A stretch of DNA of 64,000 bases from Pocillopora damicornis (GCF_003704095.1 NW_020843644.1:248001-312000), one strand, 5' to 3'; shown: positions 25,016 through 54,108, numbered from the stretch's first letter. The notes: generated from the letters alone by a model not told the origin. Translations and numbers: made by a program.

Positions 25016-25882
25016 ATGGATGATAATACGGATGCGAAAGAAACGAGAGTCGAACGTGAATTAGAGAGAACAAACGCGTACGTTCTCTCTCTTCTCAGAG
25101 ACAAACGACGATTGAACGAGGATTTGGAGAACGAACGTAAGTTGTCAAGGAAGTTGAAGGAAGAATGTTATGATTTGAGAAAGAGACTCAGAGAAAGGGA
25201 GACAGCAGGGAGTGATTCTACCGCTTGCTCTAATACTAATTCCCTCGTTAGCGTAAGCGATCGAGGCGAAGCGGAAGATCTCGCATCGAAAATCGAAGCT
25301 CTTGAGAATAGTTTGCGCGAATCACGCGCGCAAATTATGTCATTGGAGGATCACAAAACAGTGTTGGAGTCAGAAATCTTGAGATTAGCAGAAGCACTAG
25401 GAAAGGACAATTCATGTTCTGAGCTGGAGCTCTACGTAGAGCAGCTAAGTATATACGAAAATGACTTTCAGAAAGAGAGAAGTGACAAAGAAGAGGCACA
25501 GAGTAAAGTCTCCGAGCTTTCAGAACAAATCACGGACTGTCAAGACCTAATATCGACACTCACCCGAGAGGTAGACATGTACAAGAACGCGTTTGAACGA
25601 GAGAAAAGGGACAAAGAAGTGGCAATGATGCAGGAAAGAGGCGAAACGACAATGCTTAATCTACCTTCTTATTCACAATCAACATTGCCGAACTTTCCTG
25701 GAAATTTAAGCGATCAAGCTCGAGTTGCGTTACCCGTACCCGCGCCGCATCTGCAAGTTGTTTATCCTATTGTAGACTCTGGAATGCAGCAGCAAAACTC
25801 CAGGCGAAAAAGGGAGCTTCATCGCAGAGGTGTTCTCACTCGAGATACCCCTGACACAACGGATTTCTTCTATGGGAGCTGA
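25016..25882 (+). CDS. Coiled-coil protein with UBAN-like ubiquitin-binding motif (ABIN/TNIP-NEMO-optineurin type), 288 aa
   Basis: Uninterrupted ORF with long heptad repeats. QLSIYENDFQKERSDKEE resembles the TNIP1 UBAN QVKIFEEDFQRERSDRER (DFxxER core). Confidence 0.75.
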   Translation: MDDNTDAKETRVERELERTNAYVLSLLRDKRRLNEDLENERKLSRKLKEECYDLRKRLRERETAGSDSTACSNTNSLVSVSDRGEAEDLASKIEALENSLRESRAQIMSLEDHKTVLESEILRLAEALGKDNSCSELELYVEQLSIYENDFQKERSDKEEAQSKVSELSEQITDCQDLISTLTREVDMYKNAFEREKRDKEVAMMQERGETTMLNLPSYSQSTLPNFPGNLSDQARVALPVPAPHLQVVYPIVDSGMQQQNSRRKRELHRRGVLTRDTPDTTDFFYGS

Positions 25883-28242: not shown

Positions 28243-29100
28243 CTAGCTTTCACTGACTCTATCTTCTAGATCATTGAGAATCGAATAAATATATTTCACG
28301 GCTGCCCTTCGAGCGCATTTTACATTCTCTTGTCCGTCTGTTTCGATTAAGTCTAGACCAAGTAAGCAACGAGTTAGATATTCTTCTAAATAAAGGAATT
28401 CTTTGTCTTTCCTTGTTCCTTTAAAGGCCACCACCCTGGAAATCAGTTCTGTGGCTCGCACCAATTCATTCTTGATTGCCGCAAGTTTCTGTTCGTTTGC
28501 AGTTTGTATTTCGGGTGGTGAGTCATCTTGATTATCCACTACCGGTCGACTTTCCTTTGCACTTTCGTCCTCTGTGGTCACTGGAATACACCTGTGTTCG
28601 CCTGAGGTCTTTGCAGTCTCGCCCGCGGTTTGTTCTTCATTATCTGTAATCAGTGCATTTGTGGCATCACAATGATCTTCCCTCCAAGCCTCCTCGCTAG
28701 AGTCGTTGGTCGTCACAGTTTCTTCCTGGGGTTGATACTCAATAGGTATATTCCATTCATCTTGGGTTTTCTTTGGCCGTGATGGACTCGTTTGCTTTGT
28801 GTCCCCTTTCGGTTTCGTACCCTCGTGCCTCGAAAAGGGGTTTTCCCTTGCATTGTGCTGCAATGGGACTCTCGTATCATCCAACATTTGTTTATCCTTT
28901 GGAGCCCGTCTCGTTTTCTTCCTTGAGGAAACTTTTTGGGGGTTGGCAGGTGGAAAGTAAACTGCTGGGTTTTCCCAAAAGGGAAACGGTCTTTCTCCGT
29001 GAAAATCCCCCGAGCTCATGAAGAGGTTTCCTTCGTTATGACCACGTCGAGGTGGATAGCCAGTTGTCCATGGATCTCCGTAAATTATGTCACCGTACAT
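28243..29100 (-). CDS. BAG-domain co-chaperone (Hsp70 nucleotide-exchange factor), BAG3/BAG4-like, single coding exon (BAG-A)
   Basis: C-terminal FKGTRKDKEFLYLEEYLTRCLLGLDLIETDGQENVKCARRAAVKYIYSILNDLE matches the BAG consensus. First ATG at 29100; minus-strand TATAAAAG at 29182-29189; IPI and IPV motifs in the disordered middle. Confidence 0.9.
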   Translation of the reverse strand: MYGDIIYGDPWTTGYPPRRGHNEGNLFMSSGDFHGERPFPFWENPAVYFPPANPQKVSSRKKTRRAPKDKQMLDDTRVPLQHNARENPFSRHEGTKPKGDTKQTSPSRPKKTQDEWNIPIEYQPQEETVTTNDSSEEAWREDHCDATNALITDNEEQTAGETAKTSGEHRCIPVTTEDESAKESRPVVDNQDDSPPEIQTANEQKLAAIKNELVRATELISRVVAFKGTRKDKEFLYLEEYLTRCLLGLDLIETDGQENVKCARRAAVKYIYSILNDLEDRVSES

Positions 29101-29657
29101 CGTCAATATAGTAAACTTATTGCAAACGTTGATTCTTCTTCTGCTCTCAAATCTCTGAATGACCAAGCAAAAGAAGTCCTACTTTTATAGAGAGTTTTAT
29201 ATATTTCTAGAGAATGATAGAGCGTACTGGAACGATTTGTAACTACCTATTTTTAATCATATTCGAGTCATTCTCCAATAACGAGTAGAACCTACGGGAA
29301 AACCCTGGGAGATTTTTAAATTCGTCTCCAGGGTAGGGTAGAGTTGTTTTTTTTGATGAGTCATGAGTAAACTTTTTTATTTTAAACTGCAACGTTTTCC
29401 TCCTCTTTACCCTAAATAAGGATGAAGGAAGAGCTCGTAGTGTTCACAGTTTGTGTGTATGCGATAAAAGGACGAGAAGGTGAAAAACTTGTCAAGTGTC
29501 TATGTACACCTACCCCTCCCCTATCAGGAATTCTATGAAGACTATTCCAGAACATTCGAGGTGAATTTGCCACATAGTATAAAGAGCACCACGTTGACGT
29601 AGGTGACTCAAATCAGTAAAGTGTTTGAGTTGAAAGGACCGAGTCCTTGTTGAAATA
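29101..29657. promoter_or_regulatory. Bidirectional BAG-A/DnaJ-1 promoter with heat-shock elements
   Basis: Outward-facing TATA boxes (29182-29189 minus; TATAAAG 29578-29584 plus). Perfect HSE aTTCcaGAAcaTTCg 29544-29558; degenerate in-phase HSE array 29205-29232; AP-1 sites TGAGTCA 29357-29363 and TGACTCA 29604-29610; Rel-like GGGAAAACCC 29296-29305. Confidence 0.8.
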
Positions 29658-30695
29658 ATGGGAAAAGACTACTACAAGATCCTAGGCGTCTCAGAAACAG
29701 CTACGGACGATGAGATCAAGAAGGCCTACCGAAAACTTGCTCTAAAATGGCACCCGGACAAGAACAAGAGCCCAGGAGCCGAGGACAAATTCAAAGAAAT
29801 TTCCGAAGCATACGATGTCCTCAGTGACAAAGGAAAAAAAGAAACCTTCGACAAATACGGAGAAGAAGGACTTCATGGTGTTCCTAACGGTGGAACCGAC
29901 AGTAACATGCGTTTTCAAGGCGGACCAGGTTTCGCAAGAACATTCGTCTTCACGAATGGAAATGCACGCGAAACTTTTGCTCGAGCATTTGAGAATGACG
30001 ACGAATTCGCGGACCTTATTGGCGGTTTAGGGGGATTCAGCTTCTTTAATGATAGCAGGAGTAGAAAGCCAGGCACGACATTTAATAATATGGGAAATTT
30101 CACGTTCGACGCCGATTGTATTGCGCCTCAAACAAAGAAACAAAAGATTCAAGATCCCACGATCGAGAAAGATCTATTGGTGAGTCTGGAGGAACTTGTG
30201 AATGGCTGCACGAAAAAGATGAAAGTGTCAAGGAAGGTTCTGGACGATCGTGGTTTTTTCAGCACGGAAGAGAAAATATTGACGGTGAATGTCAAGCCCG
30301 GGTGGAAGGCTGGAACAAAAATCACTTTTCCTAAAGAGGGTGATCGTAAACCTGGTATCGTCCCTGCTGATGTGGTTTTCACAGTCAAAGACAAACCGCA
30401 TGCTAAGTTTACGAGGGACAGCAACAATAACATAATCTACGCCGCAGACATCTCTCTTAGAGATGCCCTGACCGGAGGACTAGCCGAAGTTCCTACAATT
30501 GATGGCCGAAAGATAAAAATGAGGTTAAGTGGCATCGTAAATCCTGATTCTTCACAACGAATTCAGGGCGAAGGTCTTCCTCTGCCTAAAAATCCCTCAA
30601 AGAGAGGTGACTTGATCGTCAAATATAACATTCGATTTCCCGATCAGCTATCCTCAGTTCAGAGAGACGTCTTATTGAATACACTACCTAGATGA
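29658..30695 (+). CDS. Class B J-domain protein (Hsp40, DNAJB1/4/5-like), intronless CDS, 345 aa (DnaJ-1)
   Basis: [10 protein letters not shown]...WHPDKNK J-domain with HPD; G/F region; C-terminal [40 protein letters not shown]. Confidence 0.96.
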
Positions 30696-33600
30696 TGTAA
30701 AAACAAAAAAACATCGAAACCGTGTGATGCTGTAAATACTTATTGTTTGTTCAATGATTTGATATATAATAGTGGATTTATTGCATATCTCTGAAAGAGA
30801 ATATTTCTGTGGTAATAACCCCTTTTTTCTCATTTTGTAACTCTTGATTCAAATTTACAAGGCTACGTATATAAAGATATGATAAGAATATTATTTTAGA
30901 TCTAACTTTTAATAGAAATTATAGTGGATATGGTTGTGTTTTGGACCTTTCAACTCCCCATGTTGATATTGGAAAAAAAAATATTCTAGATATTGAAAAA
31001 TATTTCCAGAATAAAAAGTTAAACAAATCCAATTTCTCTCTTTTTGTTCAACTATTTCATATATTTTCAAGTTTCTCTGTCCTAGTGTGTCAAAGCTCTA
31101 AGGATTTTTCGAATAAACCTGGTCATGTGATGTAGTGCTGATCTTGTTGTTTATTTCTTATTTATTTATATTAATCTTTACATCACACTATTAACATTAT
31201 ATGCTATTTAAAAGAGAAATTCTGTGTTGTTGTGTATCTGTTTGGTAATAGATCACAGATGATGTCAAAATGTAGTGAGAACAAAAAAAGGCACATGAGG
31301 TGCAGCCAAGTGTGTCTCTGACGCTCTCACCAAATTCTGACGTCTTCCATGATCTATTTCAGGACAGACCTGCAGCAACATAAAAGCTAATTCCTTTCTA
31401 TGACAAAGAGGCAAAATGACGTTAGTGGTAATGTTTTTTTTCTGTTTGCTCTCCAATAGATCATGAGTAAAGAATCCATTAAAATGCATGTATAATTCAG
31501 CTTATCACATTAACTGTAATAGAACATTTAAATGTTTTCTCTTCAACCCAGTGCCTTCCTTCAAGATTCATTCCTATGTGGTATTGACCCCCATGATACA
31601 ATCCTACTGATCTTGTTATTCAATCTTTTTTTACATTACATTTCAACATGACCCCAAAATATCCACATTTATGCCCAATTGTAAAAGAAAATTTAGATGT
31701 TTTTCTCCACATTTAACCTGATAATTTCCATTGAGATCAGTTTACGTATGATAGTGACCCTCTGGCAATACACGAGGCTGGTTATATTGCTCCTAATGAC
31801 CAACCCTCTTAAATAGATGTATTGTCGTCATGTGAGACGTAAGAAAATGGTGGATTACATAATCTGAGCTTTGTACTCCCACGCAATACTCACTTGGATT
31901 GTGCCCAGTGAGTGCTGATCTAAAAAAGTGGGTGAAAATATTAGGCATTTCCCAAAATAGGATATGATATTTGGAAAGATGACTGAAAGTTTTATGTAAT
32001 CTACATGACTATTATCCAATCTAGTGAGACTCTCTAAACTTCTAGAAAATGATAAAAGATATTAATTCAAACATGAAGTGTTTGTTTTCCTGGATCAAGG
32101 TTCACAGGGCATACTGGTTCTCTAAGAATTGCCACTTTGAATTCTTTCATTTGGTTTACATATTTGGAATAAATATTAGTCAAAATTGTCTAAAAGCTTC
32201 TAAGGAATTTATGTGAAATTATATTTCCTTCCTTTCAATTTCCTTGATTAGCTTAATGCTTTATTAGTTATGATTTAAACAACTGTATGGACTGTAATAG
32301 ACAATAAATTCAGAGGATTTCCCTTTATGGTGAGTAAAGTTGGAATGGTACAACTTTGCTGGATGACAAAGATTCACACTGTCCAGAAAGAGCTGCAGTG
32401 TCTGACAGTGTGAATAGTTGACGATTTTGTAATCTTTTGCTTTCAAACTTGTCTTGAAGCAAATATGGCATAGGAAAATAGAGGCTTAAGGCACAGCAAA
32501 AGGGACAAGTTTTCTCATTCACATGACCATTGTGATTAAGGGAAAAGATCATTGGTGCCTTGTCTTGCAACAAGATAGAACCAAAAAAGTCTGACATTAA
32601 TTGTGGGAAGATATTTATTTAAAGAGTTTGTCATAGAATAGGTTGGTGGGTTGCAAACCTAACTATTTTAACAACGTCTGAATTAATCACTACTCAAGAT
32701 CTTTGCCTTGTATTTTAAAATAAGACAACTCCTACATGCTACTTGAAATGGTAAATGAAACCTAAAAATATTTGCAAGGGTAACAGCTGATGGACTACAT
32801 CCTATGCAGGAATGGGGATTGCTAATATGCCTTTTGGTCATTATTTTGGATCAGGATAACCCAAGGTAATTGGGAATTAGGACAAATAATCTGAAAGCTT
32901 ACTTTTCATTGTGAGGAAAATTTGGTCGTTGTTTCAAAATGTTTCCAAAAACTTATTGCTTTATCTTAAATTCCCAATGATTACTATGAATTTTCTTAAT
33001 TCTGTTTGGCTCAATCTCTTAATTGTCTATCAAAAAATGCAAGGGGATTGATTAATTGATCATTTCAGGGAGTAGAGGGTTTATAGATAGTTAACCCCCT
33101 CTATTTTAAAAAAAATTTACCACCAGTTTGCAAAACAAATCAAGTATAATTTATTAATGTAAATGCAATTATGAATGCATTCTGACATTTTTTAATTATA
33201 CCTTTAAACTGAGTTAAAAACATAAATTTGCCAAAGAGAGCACCTGGCTGAGCCTAATAACAAAAAGCCGCTGATGACAACAACACAATCACACCCAATC
33301 TAATAAAAAAACTTCAGAGAAACCTACAAAACAATCTTATTTTACAATATATTGCAACATTGTCATGAACATCTACCAACCATAAAATATTAGACTTGTT
33401 GATTTATCAACAAATATTTTGCTTGCTGAAATTACCAAGTATTTACTATGGCAGTAGTGACTGTGATACCAATTTTAAAATTGCCAATTTAAACACTTTA
33501 TGTCAAATAATACCTAAGCTAATTTTGACATTCAGCAATCCATGAACCAAAAAGAATAACATATTTATACAACAATACATCCTCTCCCCTAAATATTTGA

Positions 33601-34231
33601 GTTTTCTACAATCATAAGTCCATAAGATAAATATTAGGCATATATTAACTCTATACAGTTTAAGCCAACGCTTTGTTATGCAATAACTCAAAGTGCAGCC
33701 AGCTAAACTTGCCTTGTCAACTTCTCATAAAACCTCACACACATTATATGAAGCTGCATTTTGACAAACAAAGACATTTTTTTGTCTAAACAACAATAAT
33801 AATAACTGTTATAATTTATAATGTTCACTCATTTGCTAAAAACTTCCATGGTGTTCTCTCTTCTTGCTACCAACACATGAAAAAAAATAGCTTTAAAGAT
33901 AGGTATGAATTTAAAAAAAATTGAGAGAGATTTTTGCTTAAGAAAAAGCTACAGTTGTAAGTTTACAAGGGGAAAATGGATATACACTGAAAGAAAACAA
34001 CTGTAATAATATTTCAACACCAAAATAAGTAAAGTCACATGAAGATCAGTTATGAACAGAGTTGTGCCATAATTTGTGTATCAATTAAGCAGGAAAAATA
34101 TCATTTGAAAAATATATGATTTAAACAACCTATACAAAAAATACATTCATCATGCTACCAACTGGAAATAATCTTTCTATTATTGGCAGTCTTCTTCACT
34201 ATTGTGATAAACTCTATGCTCACAAAATGCT

Positions 34232-37117
34232 CTAAAAACAGCCAGCAATATGCTGTCTCTGTTCCATTGTCAAATTTGTAGGGATCTCTACGTCAAATGT
34301 CACTATCATATCCCCCCTTTTTCCTGGAAATTTCGGCAGAGGGAGACCTTCATTTGGAATTCTTTTCTGTGTTCCTGGTTGTATAACCTCATTTAGCTGC
34401 ACTGCTAAGAATCTTCCCTTAATAGTTGGAATCTGAAGTACACATCCACAAAGAGCATCACGCAGATCCACTTTTGCTGTATAGAGGAGGTTGTTTTCAG
34501 CATCTCTTTTAAAGTATTGGTGGGGCTTGTCCCCTATAACAAAAATAATGTCTGCTGGAATTACTCCTGGTTTCTGATCTCCATGTTGTTCAAAGGTTAC
34601 TTTTGTTCCTGCCTTCCAGCCAGGTTTGACTTCAATTGTCAGAATTTTTTCTTCAGGAGAAGCCTGTCCACTGGGAGATAAGGCTTGTCTGGTTAGCTTA
34701 AGTTGTTTTGTGCATCCAGTGTCAAGTTCTTCAAGGGAAACTTGTAGGTTGGTCTCAATAGGAGGATCTCGAACAGGTTGTTTCTTAAATGGCTCAGGAC
34801 AGGGGAAGTCAAAATCTTCATCACAAAAATGTTTAAAGCCTCCAAAGGTTGATGAGTTCCGTGAGGTAGAAAACAAGCGAGAGAAATTGGGGTTAAAATC
34901 TCCATCCATGAAGTCTGTGAAAGAAAGAAACATACAGAATAAAAATGTGATTATGTACATTGTACTCTGTGTTGTGGTGAATAGATCACTACTAAATTCA
35001 ACACAAATAATATACTCTTGTAGTCTCATGAATTCGTTGAAAAACTCTTAAGTACGTACTTTCCATCTTTTACAATATGTAGTTTAAATTTAACGCTTCT
35101 AGCTGGAAATGAGATGTGACATCTGTACATACACGTATTGGGTGTTGGAGCTGAATACCACAATTCTATTAAAACAAGGGATTAAATGAAGAAACTTTCT
35201 GGTTCAGTCTACTGGAAATGTTCCAGAAGAAATGGAATTTTGAGAAATGTTGCTCTGTTTTCACACTTCAAATGCACCAGGAAATTGGTGTTCTGATTAG
35301 TCGCTCCAATGGAAATGAAATTGTTTCCACAAGAAACTTCCAGACTGAAATCATTTCATTCTTTGTTATTTTGTACTGCAGATGGTGTAAACAAGGAACC
35401 AATATTAATTGATAGAGTCTTATTGCTTTCACAAGATGAAACAAGCTTTAACCCCTAATTAAATGGAAGGTTCTAGAACAGGGAAGTTGGCAATTTTCAT
35501 CAGCACACCAAAGATAATGAGTTCAAATGTGCTCAGTAGTTCACTTAATTTTCGAAAATAGGCCTACAACTGCCATTAGTTATTTCCTGAATCATGGTTC
35601 GGTGTGACTCTTTAAAGTAAAATGAAGGGAGGTTTTGATATGCTGCTAATTATGGCGTTACGAAATTTCATGCCCCTTCAGTTGATTGTATCATCGAAGA
35701 AAAACTATGTTAAAAATGGAAACATTATCCAAATGCTACTCGAGGGAGATTTTTACGATAAACTTATTCATCATAGCTTTGCAGCAGGAATTTGATATTC
35801 GGCAAATTGAAGTAGAAATATATTTTCAAGGGACAAACAGAATGAAAACAAAGCGAAAACCAAACACAAAAAGTATCAATATATACGTTGTAGTCGAGAG
35901 AAAATTCCAGAATCATCGGATATGCTTGAAAAACGACAAACATGCAAAGTGTTCAGAATTTAAAACTGTGAGGAAAGCCATAAACTGCCAATTCAAGACT
36001 ATTACGTTTTCCCTTCAATACAAACCGGCAAAATTCAGTGGAACACTTATTCCAGTAGATGCACAGTTAAAAACAGACCAGTAATGTGTTAGTGACCGCC
36101 GACTGTTGTTTCGCATGAGCGCATTTTTGGTCGAGACAAGAAATTAATAGTAACACATTGATCTCGCCAAGCCACCTTTTTAAGTGCGTCAGGCATAACT
36201 AAATACCAAGAAACTACGTAAATGCTGAGCTCAATGCTCGCCAACGAAGATGAAAACCCTCGCGCTTATTAGTAAAGAACAGAAAATGTATTGATGAAAC
36301 GACCAGGTTTATGTTTTGAAACCTCAATTCGAACGATTCCTCGTAAGCAAAAATTTTGTGTTTAATTTCTACAAATTAAAATACTTGACAAAATCCCAAT
36401 GAAATAGTGACAGATAACCTAAAATCGAAATCTTACTGGCTCGTAAGAAGTGCAATATCAACAAGATCAAAATATAGAAGTTTCTAGAACTAGAAAACGC
36501 GCAAAACGTATTGTACTCTGATTTTCATGACGGTTCGGATCGAGTTGAGCGAACTCGGCAACAACTTGAATGTACCAAAATAATGAAAAAATCCAAACTA
36601 TACATCAACAGCCTTTCTAGAGTTTATTTTAAGGTTAAATGTAACAGTTTAGTAAATTCAGACGAAAACATCTGTAACCACTCGGTTTGTTAATACCATC
36701 TATTCTTGATGATATCGTTAAGAAGCTCAAAGATGGACGACTTAGAACTACCTGTGATAAATTCACACTAAAATCTCTCTCGATGATAAAAATCCATCAC
36801 CTACCTGAGAACTGAAAATCAGGATCATTGCCAAAAACGTCGCGGAAGATGTGCGCGGGGTCTGTGAATGGAGGGAAACCAAACCCGCCACATTCGTTCT
36901 TGAGCCCTTCTTCGCCATAGCTATCGAATATTCTTCTTTTGTCCGGATCTGTTAGCACTGAGTAGGCCTCAGATATTTTTTTGAACGTTTCTTCTGCTCC
37001 AGAGTTTTTATTCTTGTCTGGATGAAACAGAAGAGCTTGCCTTTTATAAGCCTTCTTGATGTCTTCCACCGAGGCATTCTTGGGAACCCCAAGAACGGAA
37101 TAAAAATCTCTCCCCAT
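34232..37117 (-). CDS. Class B J-domain protein (DNAJB1/4/5-like), two exons 37117-36805 and 34914-34232, 331 aa (DnaJ-2)
   Basis: Exon 1 MGRDFYSVLG...FHPDKNK...DPDFQFS with GTAGGT donor; phase-1 join to TTTCACAG acceptor; exon 2 has [28 protein letters not shown]; 996 nt including stop. Confidence 0.94.
35465..36490. promoter_or_regulatory. Three perfect three-unit HSEs in the DnaJ-2 intron
   Basis: gGAAggTTCtaGAAc 35465-35479; aGAAaaTTCcaGAAt 35899-35913; aGAAgtTTCtaGAAc 36476-36490. Confidence 0.65.
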
Positions 37118-37805
37118 ATACGCCTTCTGTTCACTACAAGCTGAAGTCTCGAAATAAAATCTCGGAATGAGGAATAGCTTTTTCCTGTACAACTGGACAG
37201 ATATCACGCGGAAATCAAGGAATAAGCACAGAGCGTAGACACTGGGTTCTTTCGAAATCGTTCACCGACCAGGACAACTGTCTTCATGTCGGCGAGTGGA
37301 TCGAATGTTCTAGAAACAGTAATCACCATGTAACCGCGCACGAAAGAAACTATTCACCTGAGAGGGGGAGCCCACGCGTTCATCCTCATGTTTATCTATT
37401 ACTCTTTCCGCCCCCCTTGCAGAGTTTTTCTTCTTGGAAATCATCATAAGCTCCAAATTATAGTTTTGATGATTTCAGATTCTTAAAAGGAATCTTTTAA
37501 AAAAATTTTCCAAGCGATAGCTCGCTGATTAGAAATGCAAAAATTTGTCTTTCTCACCCCTATTGTGTTAGTTTTGTCACTCAGCTGGACACCACAAAAC
37601 ACCGACGGCAGTGGTCACGAAGTGAATGTTCTCGAATTGTGTTTGTACTTTACAAGGTTTATTTGTTTCTTTGCCGCCTGATTTTTCGTTCAGATAATTT
37701 GCGATTGTTACGCGTGGATTACTTGGGTCAAAAACGTGTTCGCACCTCTTGTCATCGTGATATAACTTAATTTTTTGGAACAAGAAAACTCCCGAGCGGA
37801 ACAAC
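37118..37805. promoter_or_regulatory. Bidirectional DnaJ-2/BAG-B promoter with two perfect HSEs
   Basis: cGAAtgTTCtaGAAa 37302-37316 (~185 bp from the DnaJ-2 ATG); tGAAtgTTCtcGAAt 37623-37637 (~170 bp from the BAG-B ATG). Confidence 0.78.
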
Positions 37806-38555
37806 ATGGCGTCGGGTGGAAGCAACAGAGATAGATTTCCACAGTTCACATCGTCGAACTATGAAATCCCCTCGTGGCAGGTAGAATGGAATAAGCCGTG
37901 GTATCAGCAGTTTCAGGAGAAACGAAATGCCCAAAGCAATTACAATTCGAGGGGACATGTTGTAAATTGTAAATGTTCGCTATGCGAAGAAGACATGGAA
38001 TCTGCATTTTGCCCGCAAGAGAGTGGCGTAGCACATAATTTTAAACTTTCTAGAGATGAGATCGGTGGAGAAATATTTCCCCCGAATGAAAAGCTGGAAA
38101 AGCCGCAAAACCAAAGAACGGAAAATGTGATTTTATTCTCCGATTTACCGGAAGTAGTACCATCAACGTCAGCGTCTGCTGAAACCGAAGTTCCCGAAGA
38201 AATTCATTTTAGTGCGTCATCACAGCACAATTCCAACTCGTCAGCATCATTCGAAAGTTCTACGAACATCGACACAGATGCATTATTTAACAACATTGGC
38301 AGTCTATCTGCTGTTCAATCGATATCGGATCGAGTTACAGATCTACAAACGCAGGTGGAAAATTTCTCGGGTGAGAAAGACAGTCGCGAGTTTATAGTCT
38401 TACGAGGTTTGCTCGTAGCCACCCTAGCTGAACTGAACCGTATCGACGCAGTTGGCATCAGATGGCTCCAGCAGGCAAAAAGTATCGCTATGGAGTCAAT
38501 TCATGATCTGCTGAACCAATTAAGAAGCAAAATCAAAGAAGAAGATGACTACTGA
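37806..38555 (+). CDS. Divergent BAG-domain protein, single ORF, 249 aa (BAG-B)
   Basis: AACATGG start context. C-terminal VQSISDRVTDLQTQVENFSGEKDSREFIVLRGLLVATLAELNRIDAVGIRWLQQAKSIAMESIHDLLNQL aligns without gaps to the BAG domain of BAG-A (FxGxKxxxEF, hydrophobic pattern). Confidence 0.78.
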   Translation: MASGGSNRDRFPQFTSSNYEIPSWQVEWNKPWYQQFQEKRNAQSNYNSRGHVVNCKCSLCEEDMESAFCPQESGVAHNFKLSRDEIGGEIFPPNEKLEKPQNQRTENVILFSDLPEVVPSTSASAETEVPEEIHFSASSQHNSNSSASFESSTNIDTDALFNNIGSLSAVQSISDRVTDLQTQVENFSGEKDSREFIVLRGLLVATLAELNRIDAVGIRWLQQAKSIAMESIHDLLNQLRSKIKEEDDY

Positions 38556-53379: not shown

Positions 53380-54108
53380 TCAATCGTTTTTACAACCAAG
53401 GAAGCCGTGAATACTCAGTGACGTCTTTACTCTTTTCTCCCGTTGCCGTCTGTTACAGAACCACACTCGCACAACCTCCCTATCCAGGCGCAATCCCTCG
53501 GCAATGCGAACGATTTCTTGGGAAGATGGTTTTGGTTGTTTAAGAAAATGATCTTCAAGATGTTCCTTAGCAGTCAGACCGATAGTGGTTCGTCTTTTTC
53601 TACGGCGTTCAGCGTTGAATTTATCACCACACGCCCCTCCAGAACATTCAGCCTCTTCAAGCCAGCGCGCCAGAATCGGCTTCAGCTTACAAGCGTTCTT
53701 AAAGCTTAGTTGCAGATTCTCGAAGCGGCAGATGGTGGTTTGGCTAAAATCTGTTCCGTGGACTGTTGCTAATGCTGCACCAACGTTCGTCTGTGTAAAA
53801 CCCAGCTTGATGCGGCGGAGTTTGAACTGAGTCGCGAACTCCTCCAATTCGCGCAGTTTTGAAGTGTCAATGGCAAAACCCAAGCCGTGATGTGGTGCTG
53901 ACATACTGGGATCGCTGTCAAAATTAGCCATAGGGTTTAGCATAAATGGAGATGCCACGTGGATATTCGCTCGCGGGTCCATCTTACTGCAGTGAGTTAC
54001 TGGCGGTAGAGAGGTGGGATGCGAAGGCATCATTGAAATGGGCGTCTCGCGAACCATTTGCTGAAAAGGCGCATAGGATACTTCGGGTGGATATGGAGGG
54101 CAAGCCAT
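53380..54108 (-). CDS. POU1F1: POU class 1 homeobox transcription factor (Pit-1), intronless CDS, 242 aa
   Basis: POU-specific domain [46 protein letters not shown] and homeodomain ending [16 protein letters not shown] are class-1 diagnostic ([23 protein letters not shown]). Confidence 0.95.

What the first reader, a model, noticed from the sequence alone, without database searches (positions are those of the whole stretch)
28243..38555. Mirror-duplicated BAG/DnaJB bidirectional cassettes: a compact Hsp70 co-chaperone regulon
Seen: order BAG-A(-) | DnaJ-1(+) ... DnaJ-2(-) | BAG-B(+). Each pair is head-to-head across only 557 or 688 bp (ATG to ATG), and each spacer has perfect HSE(s). No Hsp70 lies in the window. 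Established: class B J-proteins stimulate Hsp70 ATP hydrolysis and BAG domains drive nucleotide exchange, the two complementary steps of the Hsp70 cycle. Inference: an ancestral BAG-DnaJB divergent pair was duplicated by inversion, and the shared promoters couple J-protein and exchange-factor output under HSF control. I do not know this arrangement from bilaterian models. If the host is a coral, it is a candidate thermal-tolerance locus.
Basis: partly seen in the sequence, partly recalled or inferred. Interest (0 to 1): 0.85.

Follow-up and report, generated by a model that had tools for sequence, protein, structure and literature searches.

The report
Conserved BAG–DnaJB heat-shock gene pairs
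In this stony-coral (Pocillopora) genome the genes for the two kinds of Hsp70 helper, a J-protein and a BAG protein, lie head-to-head in three pairs (two in the window, one 40 kb upstream). Each gene has conserved heat-shock elements, and one pair is also present in the sea anemone Nematostella, so this is an ancient, probably co-regulated stress unit that I could not find described.

Summary
The window is Pocillopora DNA. It holds BAG-A(-)|DnaJ-1(+) and DnaJ-2(-)|BAG-B(+), head-to-head across 557 and 688 bp, with perfect HSEs in both spacers (9 in the window against 1.5 expected).

- **A third pair.** BAG-C(-)|DnaJ-3(+) lies about 41 kb upstream on the same contig.
- **Conservation.** The layout recurs in Desmophyllum, an acroporid-like contig and several unnamed coral contigs. 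The BAG-A|DnaJ-1 pair recurs in Nematostella with HSE-like arrays and two TATA boxes.
- **HSE footprints.** HSEs sit in invariant blocks of the aligned spacers and of the DnaJ-2 intron.
- **Expression.** RNA contigs from four studies confirm the DnaJ-2 splice.

- The pairs are old paralogues, but a single "mirror" inversion making A and B is not shown. The trees are unresolved and there is no DNA-level inverted repeat.
- Each gene has its own TATA box and HSE rather than one shared promoter.
- BAG-B lacks the canonical Hsp70-contact residues.
- Heat induction and HSF dependence could not be tested.

I rate it a new variant of a known kind (divergent heat-shock gene pairs) and moderately interesting. 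The scan holds no note of this arrangement on other DNA.

The parts
28243..29100 (-). BAG-A coding sequence (285 aa, single exon). The BAG domain is at the C-terminus, and there is an NIPIEY (IPV-like) motif.
   Evidence: ORF. Pfam BAG 47.9 bits. 99% identical to P. verrucosa 'BAG family molecular chaperone regulator 4'. Orthologues in other corals.
29101..29657 (.). Spacer A, with two core promoters. On the BAG-A side: a TATA box at about 29183-29190 (-), a gap-type HSE-like site at 29206-29224 and a one-mismatch HSE at 29288-29300. On the DnaJ-1 side: a four-unit HSE at 29540-29557 and TATAAAG at 29578-29584 (+).
   Evidence: Sequence. HSE scans. These blocks are conserved in L015, Desmophyllum and L018 (alignment A3).
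29658..30695 (+). DnaJ-1, an intronless class B J-protein (345 aa).
   Evidence: Pfam DnaJ + DnaJ_C. Closest solved CTD and J domain are human DNAJB1. Intronless orthologues in L015, L016, L018, L019 and Nematostella L024.
34232..34914 (-). DnaJ-2 exon 2 (end of the G/F region, C-terminal domains, stop codon).
   Evidence: Pfam DnaJ_C E 6e-39. Acceptor cacag|ac. RNA joint.
34915..36804 (-). DnaJ-2 intron (phase 1), with three perfect HSEs at 35466-35478, 35900-35912 and 36477-36489. About 1.35 kb of it is conserved across corals.
   Evidence: Joint that skips 1890 bases in 4 RNA runs. HSEs. Invariant blocks in alignment A6. Three intronic HSEs also in L015 and L016.
36805..37117 (-). DnaJ-2 exon 1 (J domain and start of the G/F region).
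   Evidence: Pfam DnaJ E 1e-26. Donor tca g|gtaggt. RNA joint.
37118..37805 (.). Spacer B. The HSE at 37303-37315 is nearer DnaJ-2 and the HSE at 37624-37636 is nearer BAG-B.
   Evidence: GAAGGTTCTAGAA is invariant in four species, and the second HSE is kept in Desmophyllum and L019 (alignment A2).
37806..38555 (+). BAG-B (249 aa, single exon). It has a divergent BAG-type three-helix C-terminus and an invariant W/C-rich N-terminal module.
   Evidence: Pfam weak. BLASTP to BAG-A E 2e-9. hhalign to BAG-C profile 95%. Model helices 157-242 match BAG domains among other bundles. 26 orthologue clusters, 43-99% identical.

Best explanation
The finding is part of a conserved cluster of three divergently transcribed gene pairs on one coral contig. 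Each pair joins a DNAJB1-like class B J-protein with a short-BAG-domain protein of the BAG3/BAG4 kind.
- BAG-C(-)|DnaJ-3(+) lies at contig positions 229.6-235.4 kb.
- BAG-A(-)|DnaJ-1(+) lies at 276.2-278.7 kb.
- DnaJ-2(-)|BAG-B(+) lies at 282.2-286.6 kb.

The pairs are ancient paralogues of one ancestral BAG|DnaJB pair. That pair already existed before sea anemones and stony corals separated.

Proposed mechanism:
1. Under proteotoxic or heat stress, HSF trimers bind the HSEs that lie 20-250 bp upstream of each gene's own TATA box. In DnaJ-2 they also bind three conserved intronic HSEs.
2. Both genes of a pair are therefore switched on together.
3. The J-protein delivers clients and triggers ATP hydrolysis by Hsp70. 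BAG-A and BAG-C then release ADP.
4. BAG-C (two IPV-type motifs) and BAG-A (one) may also tie Hsp70 to small heat-shock proteins, as BAG3 does.
5. BAG-B keeps the fold but has a remodelled surface, so its partner is uncertain.

Shown: gene identities, arrangement, conservation, HSE enrichment and footprints, and expression and splicing of DnaJ-2. Inferred: HSF binding, heat co-induction, nucleotide-exchange activity and small-HSP binding.
For: - **Genes and domains:**
- **Third pair:** found with PF02179 and PF01556 in the own genome and read in L014. It has an HSE in its spacer.
- **Family size:** only one other BAG locus (C295) and no other DNAJB1-like locus exist in the genome.
- **Synteny:**
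  - The quartet A+B is present in L015, L016 (Desmophyllum pertusum) and L018.
  - Pair C is present in L021, L022, L023 (same 90% protein cluster as Montipora) and L054.
  - All three BAGs are reported on a 38.5-Mb Oculina record.
  - Nematostella scaffold DS469509.1 has DnaJ(-)|BAG(+) 378 bp apart. Its DnaJ is 60% identical to DnaJ-1, and its BAG domain is 48% identical to BAG-A's.
- **Trees:** three clean orthogroups for each family. The DnaJ trio is monophyletic, and the Nematostella DnaJ lies within the DnaJ-1 group at 93/95.
- **Shared intron:** DnaJ-2 and DnaJ-3 have a phase-1 intron at the same place.
- **HSEs:** enrichment. Conservation in orthologous spacers and in the intron. In Nematostella, 6 of the 12 one-mismatch HSE sites in 20.7 kb lie in the 378-bp spacer, next to two TATA boxes.
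- **HSE use in this genome:** an intronless cytosolic Hsp70 elsewhere in the genome carries two perfect HSEs.
- **Expression:** the splice-junction unitig has depth 499-1172, against 10-239 for the intron contig, in four RNA libraries.
Against: - No measurement of heat induction or HSF binding was possible. The RNA runs are stored as contigs only.
- On the BAG-A side the Pocillopora HSEs are imperfect, though they are perfect in two relatives.
- L018 has no perfect HSE in spacer A, and L023 has none in spacer C.
- The BAG tree does not show that A, B and C form one clade apart from the C295 gene and the bilaterian-like BAGs, so en-bloc duplication rests mainly on the arrangement and on the DnaJ tree.
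- That DnaJ tree is rooted only by short exon fragments.
- BAG-B lacks the canonical Hsp70-contact residues.
- L019 has no BAG-A next to DnaJ-1, so the pairing can be lost.
Confidence: 0.7

Rival explanations
1. One reading: one inverted duplication of a BAG|DnaJB cassette produced the mirror quartet, so DnaJ-1/DnaJ-2 and BAG-A/BAG-B are each sister paralogues.
For: - Mirror gene order with only 3.5 kb between the two DnaJ genes.
- The best DnaJ tree joins J1 and J2.
- The BAG-B profile hits only itself and BAG-A in the own genome.
Against: - The J1+J2 node has only 46-59% support.
- The BAG tree places B weakly with C, and A with the C295 and other BAGs.
- No DNA-level inverted repeat remains.
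- DnaJ-2 shares its intron with DnaJ-3, while DnaJ-1 has none.
- Pairs A and C have the same orientation, so a tandem copy followed by a separate inversion is equally possible.
Confidence: 0.3
2. The pairing is inherited microsynteny without functional coupling. The genes stay adjacent because short divergent promoters are hard to separate. Each is regulated on its own, and some copies are constitutive.
For: - Each gene has its own TATA box and HSE.
- HSE quality differs between the partners: perfect at DnaJ-1, imperfect at BAG-A in Pocillopora.
- L019 has lost BAG-A but kept DnaJ-1.
- DnaJ-2 appears well expressed in field and laboratory RNA libraries whose conditions are not known to me.
Against: - Three paralogous pairs have all kept the head-to-head layout across robust and complex corals, and one has kept it in Nematostella.
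- HSEs are kept on both sides of the spacers in several species.
Confidence: 0.2
3. BAG-B is not a nucleotide-exchange factor but a neofunctionalised BAG-fold protein, for example a competitor or an adaptor for another partner. Pair B would then not be a J-protein/exchange-factor unit.
For: - In BAG-B the motifs corresponding to LEE..L, ELD and ARK/ARR of BAG-A, BAG-C and BAG4 read LRGLL, ELN and AKS. These changes are invariant in 9 species.
- Its Pfam score is below the cut-off.
- It has a very long stem branch in the BAG tree.
- It is nevertheless the most conserved of the three: 69-75% identical in Oculina and Desmophyllum, against 46-47% for BAG-A.
- It has an invariant N-terminal module.
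Against: - The C-terminus is still predicted as a BAG-like three-helix bundle.
- It keeps an HSE-bearing promoter head-to-head with a J-protein gene.
- No binding test could be run.
Confidence: 0.45
4. The arrangement and the HSE excess are due to chance or to an assembly artefact.
For: None beyond the general possibility. The assembly is fragmented (4393 contigs).
Against: The same layout is found in independent assemblies of several species. RNA contigs are collinear with the window. The HSE excess has p about 1e-6.
Confidence: 0.01

Closest known systems
Mammalian HSPD1/HSPE1 (Hsp60/Hsp10) bidirectional gene pair (from my own knowledge of the literature)
   Same: A chaperone-system pair transcribed head-to-head from a short intergenic region that carries heat-shock elements, so that two partners of one machine are made together.
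   Different: The families differ (chaperonin and co-chaperonin). Here both genes are Hsp70 co-chaperones and the chaperone itself is unlinked. Here each gene has its own TATA box and HSE, and the unit exists in three paralogous copies.
C. elegans hsp-16 gene pairs and the Drosophila Hsp70Aa/Ab divergent pair (own knowledge)
   Same: Divergently transcribed heat-shock genes with HSEs in a spacer of a few hundred bp. The hsp-16 pairs were themselves duplicated, partly as an inverted repeat, which is the closest precedent for a 'mirror' cassette.
   Different: Those pairs join two members of the same family and are recent duplicates that are still recognisable at the DNA level. Here the partners belong to two unrelated families with complementary roles, and the duplication is too old to leave any DNA similarity.
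Human BAG3/BAG4 and DNAJB1
   Same: The BAG profile of the coral proteins matches BAG4/SODD (E 7e-23) and BAG3 (E 7e-21) best among solved structures. DnaJ-1 matches the DNAJB1 C-terminal and J domains. BAG-C carries two IPV-type motifs as BAG3 does. BAG3 and DNAJB1 are HSF1 targets in mammals (own knowledge).
   Different: No WW domain or PxxP region was found in the coral proteins (Pfam). In human the genes are on different chromosomes (own knowledge), so the linkage is not known there.

Membership tests
Class B J-domain proteins (DNAJB1/Sis1 type) | N-terminal J domain with the HPD motif | tested here: met
   Pfam DnaJ E 1e-28 (DnaJ-1) and 1e-26 (DnaJ-2 exon 1). HPDKN can be read in DnaJ-1, DnaJ-2 and DnaJ-3.
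Class B J-domain proteins (DNAJB1/Sis1 type) | Gly/Phe-rich linker and no zinc-finger (CXXCXGXG) domain, which separates class B from class A | tested here: met
   No zinc-finger family among the Pfam hits. GGLGGFSFF in DnaJ-1 and GGFGFPPF in DnaJ-2 can be read in the translations.
Class B J-domain proteins (DNAJB1/Sis1 type) | C-terminal substrate-binding domains (DnaJ_C) | tested here: met
   Pfam DnaJ_C E 4e-39, 6e-39 and 3e-34 for DnaJ-1, -2 and -3. The closest solved CTD is human DNAJB1.
Class B J-domain proteins (DNAJB1/Sis1 type) | Stimulates the Hsp70 ATPase | not testable with these tools
   A biochemical property, inferred here from homology only.
BAG-domain nucleotide-exchange factors | BAG domain recognised above the family's score cut-off | tested here: met
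   This row covers BAG-A and BAG-C. BAG-A 47.9 bits and 50.2 bits, BAG-C 56.4 bits, against a cut-off of 23.4.
BAG-domain nucleotide-exchange factors | BAG domain recognised above the cut-off (BAG-B) | tested here: inconclusive
   Pfam gives 21.6 bits, below 23.4, and BAG-B is missed by the own-genome scan. Against that, hhalign to the BAG-C profile gives 95%, two orthologue clusters carry a precomputed PF02179 hit, and the modelled three-helix bundle matches BAG domains at Z 9.5-10.4 among many other helical bundles.
BAG-domain nucleotide-exchange factors | Conserved Hsp70-contact residues on helices 2 and 3: the Glu, Asp and Arg/Lys positions of the BAG1-Hsc70 interface (named from my own knowledge) | tested here: not met
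   This row covers BAG-B. The positions read LRGLL, ELN and AKS, invariant in 9 species. They are kept in BAG-C (IEEKL, ELD, RKRAVQ) and mostly in BAG-A (LEEYL, GLD, ARRAAV). So BAG-A and BAG-C pass, and BAG-B should not be filed as an exchange factor.
BAG-domain nucleotide-exchange factors | Binds the Hsp70 nucleotide-binding domain and speeds ADP release | not testable with these tools
HSF-controlled heat-shock promoters | At least three alternating nGAAn units close to the core promoter | tested here: met
   Perfect sites at 29545, 37303 and 37624, 20-250 bp from TATA-like boxes.
HSF-controlled heat-shock promoters | The elements are under selection (conserved in position between species) | tested here: met
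   Invariant HSE blocks in alignments A2, A3, A6 and A9. HSE-like arrays in the Nematostella spacer.
HSF-controlled heat-shock promoters | Transcripts rise on heat shock, and HSF1 occupies the site | not testable with these tools
   All runs that hold the locus are stored as contigs, so no levels can be compared. No paper in the held library reports these genes.
Bidirectional (divergent) gene pairs | Head-to-head genes with less than about 1 kb between their starts | tested here: met
   557 bp (pair A), 688 bp (pair B) and 378 bp (Nematostella), measured ATG to ATG. Pair C is wider at 1354 bp.
Bidirectional (divergent) gene pairs | One shared regulatory element drives both genes | tested here: inconclusive
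   Separate TATA boxes and separate proximal HSEs are seen for each gene. Whether an HSE acts on both sides needs reporter assays.

The most novel reading that the evidence does not exclude
The BAG|DnaJB divergent pair is an ancient unit, at least as old as Hexacorallia. Selection keeps it together so that the 'on' (J-protein) and 'off' (exchange factor) co-chaperones of Hsp70 are made in a fixed ratio under HSF control. Its triplication gave three specialised Hsp70-cycle modules:
- a BAG3-like module linked to small heat-shock proteins (pair C);
- a fast, intronless module (pair A);
- a module whose BAG-fold partner, BAG-B, has acquired a new binding surface and function.

Natural variation in these spacers would then be a direct handle on coral thermal tolerance.
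Probability: 0.3. Interest if true: 0.75.

Novelty: new variant of a known kind. Interest (0 to 1): 0.58.

Why it matters
The ratio of J-protein to exchange factor sets whether Hsp70 holds, folds or releases its clients. How cells keep that ratio right during a heat-shock burst is usually explained by separate promoters on separate chromosomes.

Here is a hard-wired pairing of the two gene classes. It is conserved from sea anemone to reef corals, is present in three copies, and has footprinted HSEs. That would be a simple genomic answer to the ratio problem in one animal lineage.

It also gives concrete targets for coral heat-tolerance work: six genes, three spacers and one conserved intron. 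Nematostella is a tractable species in which to mutate them.

In addition, the locus flags BAG-B as a strongly conserved BAG-fold protein that has probably left the exchange-factor role.

Tried and rejected
- **Complex prediction.** It gives no evidence either way.
- **Expression levels.** Every run holding the locus is kept as contigs, so depth cannot rank genes or conditions. Only pair B could be laid, because one call of 6 kb was allowed.
- **Named genomes.** Look-ups of the RefSeq-only proteins of Oculina and Montipora returned 'not on record'. Their local gene order is therefore inferred only from shared contig lengths and locus tags.
- **Metagenome scan with BAG.** A broad BAG alignment was too diverse for the scan.
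- **Metagenome scan with DnaJ-1.**
  - The scan with the DnaJ-1 group returned mostly bacterial CbpA/DnaJ loci.
  - Only one further locus, coral-like, had a BAG neighbour.
  - Two eukaryote-like DNAJB loci with 6-kb flanks had none. This is weak evidence that the pairing is not general.
  - L037 comes from a human-gut metagenome record. I left it out of the script and did not examine it.
- **Trees.** The deep order of both families stays unresolved. The outgroups for DnaJ are single-exon fragments.
- **Spliced genes.** DnaJ-2 and DnaJ-3 were handled exon by exon, by reference. I did not build or search a joined coding sequence.
- **DNA-level mirror symmetry.** None was found.
- **RNA families.** No Rfam family lies in 27-43 kb.
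- **Bacterial promoter scan.** It is irrelevant to a eukaryote.
- **Literature.** Eight searches found no description of BAG-DnaJB linkage, and no report of heat induction of these coral BAG genes. The library lacks most subscription journals, so absence is not proof.
- **Taxon of L019.** The sample code was not found in any paper.

Full report
**What is there.**
- The region holds four genes exactly as described.
  - BAG-A: 28243-29100, minus strand, 285 aa, one exon.
  - DnaJ-1: 29658-30695, plus strand, 345 aa, no intron.
  - DnaJ-2: minus strand, exon 1 at 37117-36805 and exon 2 at 34914-34232.
  - BAG-B: 37806-38555, plus strand, 249 aa.
- The DnaJ-2 intron has a GT..AG boundary in phase 1.
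- The spliced junction 34914->36805 is present in assembled RNA contigs of four runs from four studies. The junction unitig is 2.7- to 60-fold deeper than the intron contig.
- Both start-to-start distances (557 and 688 bp) are right.
- The J-proteins have a J domain with HPD, a Gly/Phe stretch, DnaJ_C and no zinc finger. This is class B, nearest to human DNAJB1 among solved structures.
- No Hsp70 gene lies on the whole 724-kb contig.

**The host.**
- BAG-A is 99% identical to Pocillopora verrucosa XP_058962498.1.
- The assembly size of 234 Mb equals that published for P. damicornis (PMC6208414).

**Heat-shock elements.**
- The 13-mer GAAnnTTCnnGAA (either strand) occurs 9 times in the window, against 1.5 in shuffles.
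- Six of the nine lie in spacer A (29545), spacer B (37303, 37624) and the DnaJ-2 intron (35466, 35900, 36477).
- With one mismatch allowed, 12 sites fall in these 3135 bp against 1.9 expected from the rest of the window (p 7e-7).
- The spacer sequences show two core promoters each.
  - In spacer A, a four-unit HSE (29540-29557) sits 21 bp upstream of TATAAAG, which lies 74 bp before the DnaJ-1 start.
  - On the other strand, a TATA box lies about 85 bp before the BAG-A start, followed by a gap-type HSE-like site and a one-mismatch HSE.
- The 'shared promoter' is therefore better described as two closely spaced promoters, each with its own HSE.

**A third pair.**
- Scanning the genome with the BAG and DnaJ_C families found one more of each on the same contig, 13-18 kb before the window start.
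- In locus L014 they read BAG-C (minus, 423 aa, one exon) and DnaJ-3 (plus, two exons). They are head-to-head across 1354 bp, with a perfect HSE in the spacer.
- DnaJ-3 has a phase-1 intron at the same place as DnaJ-2. DnaJ-1 has none.
- Beyond these genes, the genome has only one further BAG locus (contig C295, with a P/Q-rich N-terminus) and no further DNAJB1-like locus.
- Three of the four BAG genes are thus each paired with one of the three DNAJB1-like genes. This cannot be chance.

**Conservation.**
- The order BAG-A|DnaJ-1 ... DnaJ-2|BAG-B recurs in three places: an unnamed coral contig (L015), Desmophyllum pertusum (L016) and a more distant contig (L018).
- L019 is more distant still (BAG-B 43% identical). 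It keeps the NEMO-like gene, DnaJ-1, DnaJ-2 and BAG-B but has no BAG-A.
- Pair C recurs in L021, L022, L023 and L054. L023's protein falls in the same 90% cluster as Montipora, that is, Acroporidae and 'complex' corals.
- In Oculina patagonica the three BAGs are reported on a 38.5-Mb record. BAG-C and BAG-B carry locus tags nine apart.
- Most telling is Nematostella vectensis (scaffold DS469509.1).
  - An intronless DnaJ (351 aa, 60% identical to DnaJ-1) lies head-to-head with a BAG gene (371 aa, BAG domain 48% identical to BAG-A). They are 378 bp apart.
  - That spacer has two TATA boxes.
  - It also holds two arrays of HSE-like pentamers. Six of the twelve one-mismatch sites in the 20.7-kb locus lie there.
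- In the aligned coral spacers, and in 1.35 kb of the DnaJ-2 intron, the HSEs sit in invariant blocks. I read this as selection on the elements.

**Evolution.**
- In the tree of the C-terminal domain, DnaJ-1, -2 and -3 each form an orthogroup across species. Together they stand apart from the other DnaJ_C fragments of the genome (85-94% support).
- The order among the three is unresolved (46-59%).
- The Nematostella gene groups with DnaJ-1 (93/95). If the fragment-based root holds, the three copies arose before anemones and stony corals split.
- In the BAG tree the three orthogroups are solid, but their relations are not. BAG-B has a very long stem.
- There is no inverted repeat at the DNA level.
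- An ancestral pair that was copied is therefore the economical reading. A single inversion that made the A/B mirror is only one of several possible histories.

**The BAG proteins.**
- Their profile is closest to human BAG4/SODD and BAG3.
- BAG-C keeps all the canonical contact positions. It also has two invariant IPV-type motifs (EIPVTVH, SIPIQVE), as BAG3 does. BAG-A has one (NIPIEY).
- BAG-B has replaced the acidic and basic contact residues, invariantly in nine species.
- BAG-B scores under Pfam's cut-off, yet it is the best conserved of the three. It is still modelled as a three-helix bundle that matches BAG domains.
- I would not call BAG-B an exchange factor without an assay.

**What could not be done.**
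- Heat induction, HSF binding and Hsp70 binding are untested here.
- DnaJ-2 and DnaJ-3 were analysed exon by exon.
- Searches of the held literature found no description of this linkage, and no report on these coral BAG genes.

**Verdict.** This is a real, ancient and probably HSF-driven set of J-protein/BAG gene pairs. It is a new variant of the known theme of divergent heat-shock gene pairs. It is of moderate interest, and it is readily testable in Nematostella and in corals.

Noticed in passing
L014:1614-7418 (contig C279 229,614-235,418, upstream of the window): A third head-to-head pair: BAG-C (423 aa, two IPV-type motifs) and DnaJ-3 (two exons). The spacer is 1354 bp with a perfect HSE, and a KDM1A-like amine-oxidase gene follows.
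   Followed up: yes
window 34915-36804: The DnaJ-2 intron is conserved over about 1.35 kb between three corals. Its three HSEs lie in invariant blocks, and intron contigs have 2-37% of the junction depth in RNA libraries. It may be an intronic HSF enhancer or an internal transcript. No Rfam match.
   Followed up: partly
window 37806-37990 (BAG-B residues 1-61): An invariant N-terminal module of BAG-B (PQFTSSNYEIPSWQ.EWNKPWYQ, then C.C..CEED). It has no Pfam family and no confident model.
   Followed up: partly
window 42270-42325, minus strand: A perfect HSE (42309-42321) followed about 15 bp downstream by TATATAAGG on the minus strand. This is a complete stress-type promoter with no obvious gene. 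Another first-stage note calls it a solo LTR.
   Followed up: no
L019:2066-4177: In this distant relative the place of BAG-A, between the NEMO-like gene and DnaJ-1, holds no BAG ORF. The pairing has been lost there.
   Followed up: partly
window 25016-25882 (+): A coiled-coil gene with a weak NEMO CC2-LZ match (E 5e-7). Its orthologues flank BAG-A in L015 and DnaJ-1 in L019, so it is part of the conserved block.
   Followed up: partly
window 53380-54108 (-): A 242-aa single ORF with a POU-specific domain and a homeodomain (E 1e-36 and 2e-17). It is a POU-class transcription factor gene or its last exon.
   Followed up: no
L025:1700-4195 (contig C853): An intronless cytosolic Hsp70 (ends in EEVD) with two perfect HSEs upstream. 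Its paralogue on C1169 (L026) has none. They are likely the inducible and the constitutive copy.
   Followed up: partly
window ~48300-48860: A run of N (an assembly gap or masked stretch). I left it alone.
   Followed up: no
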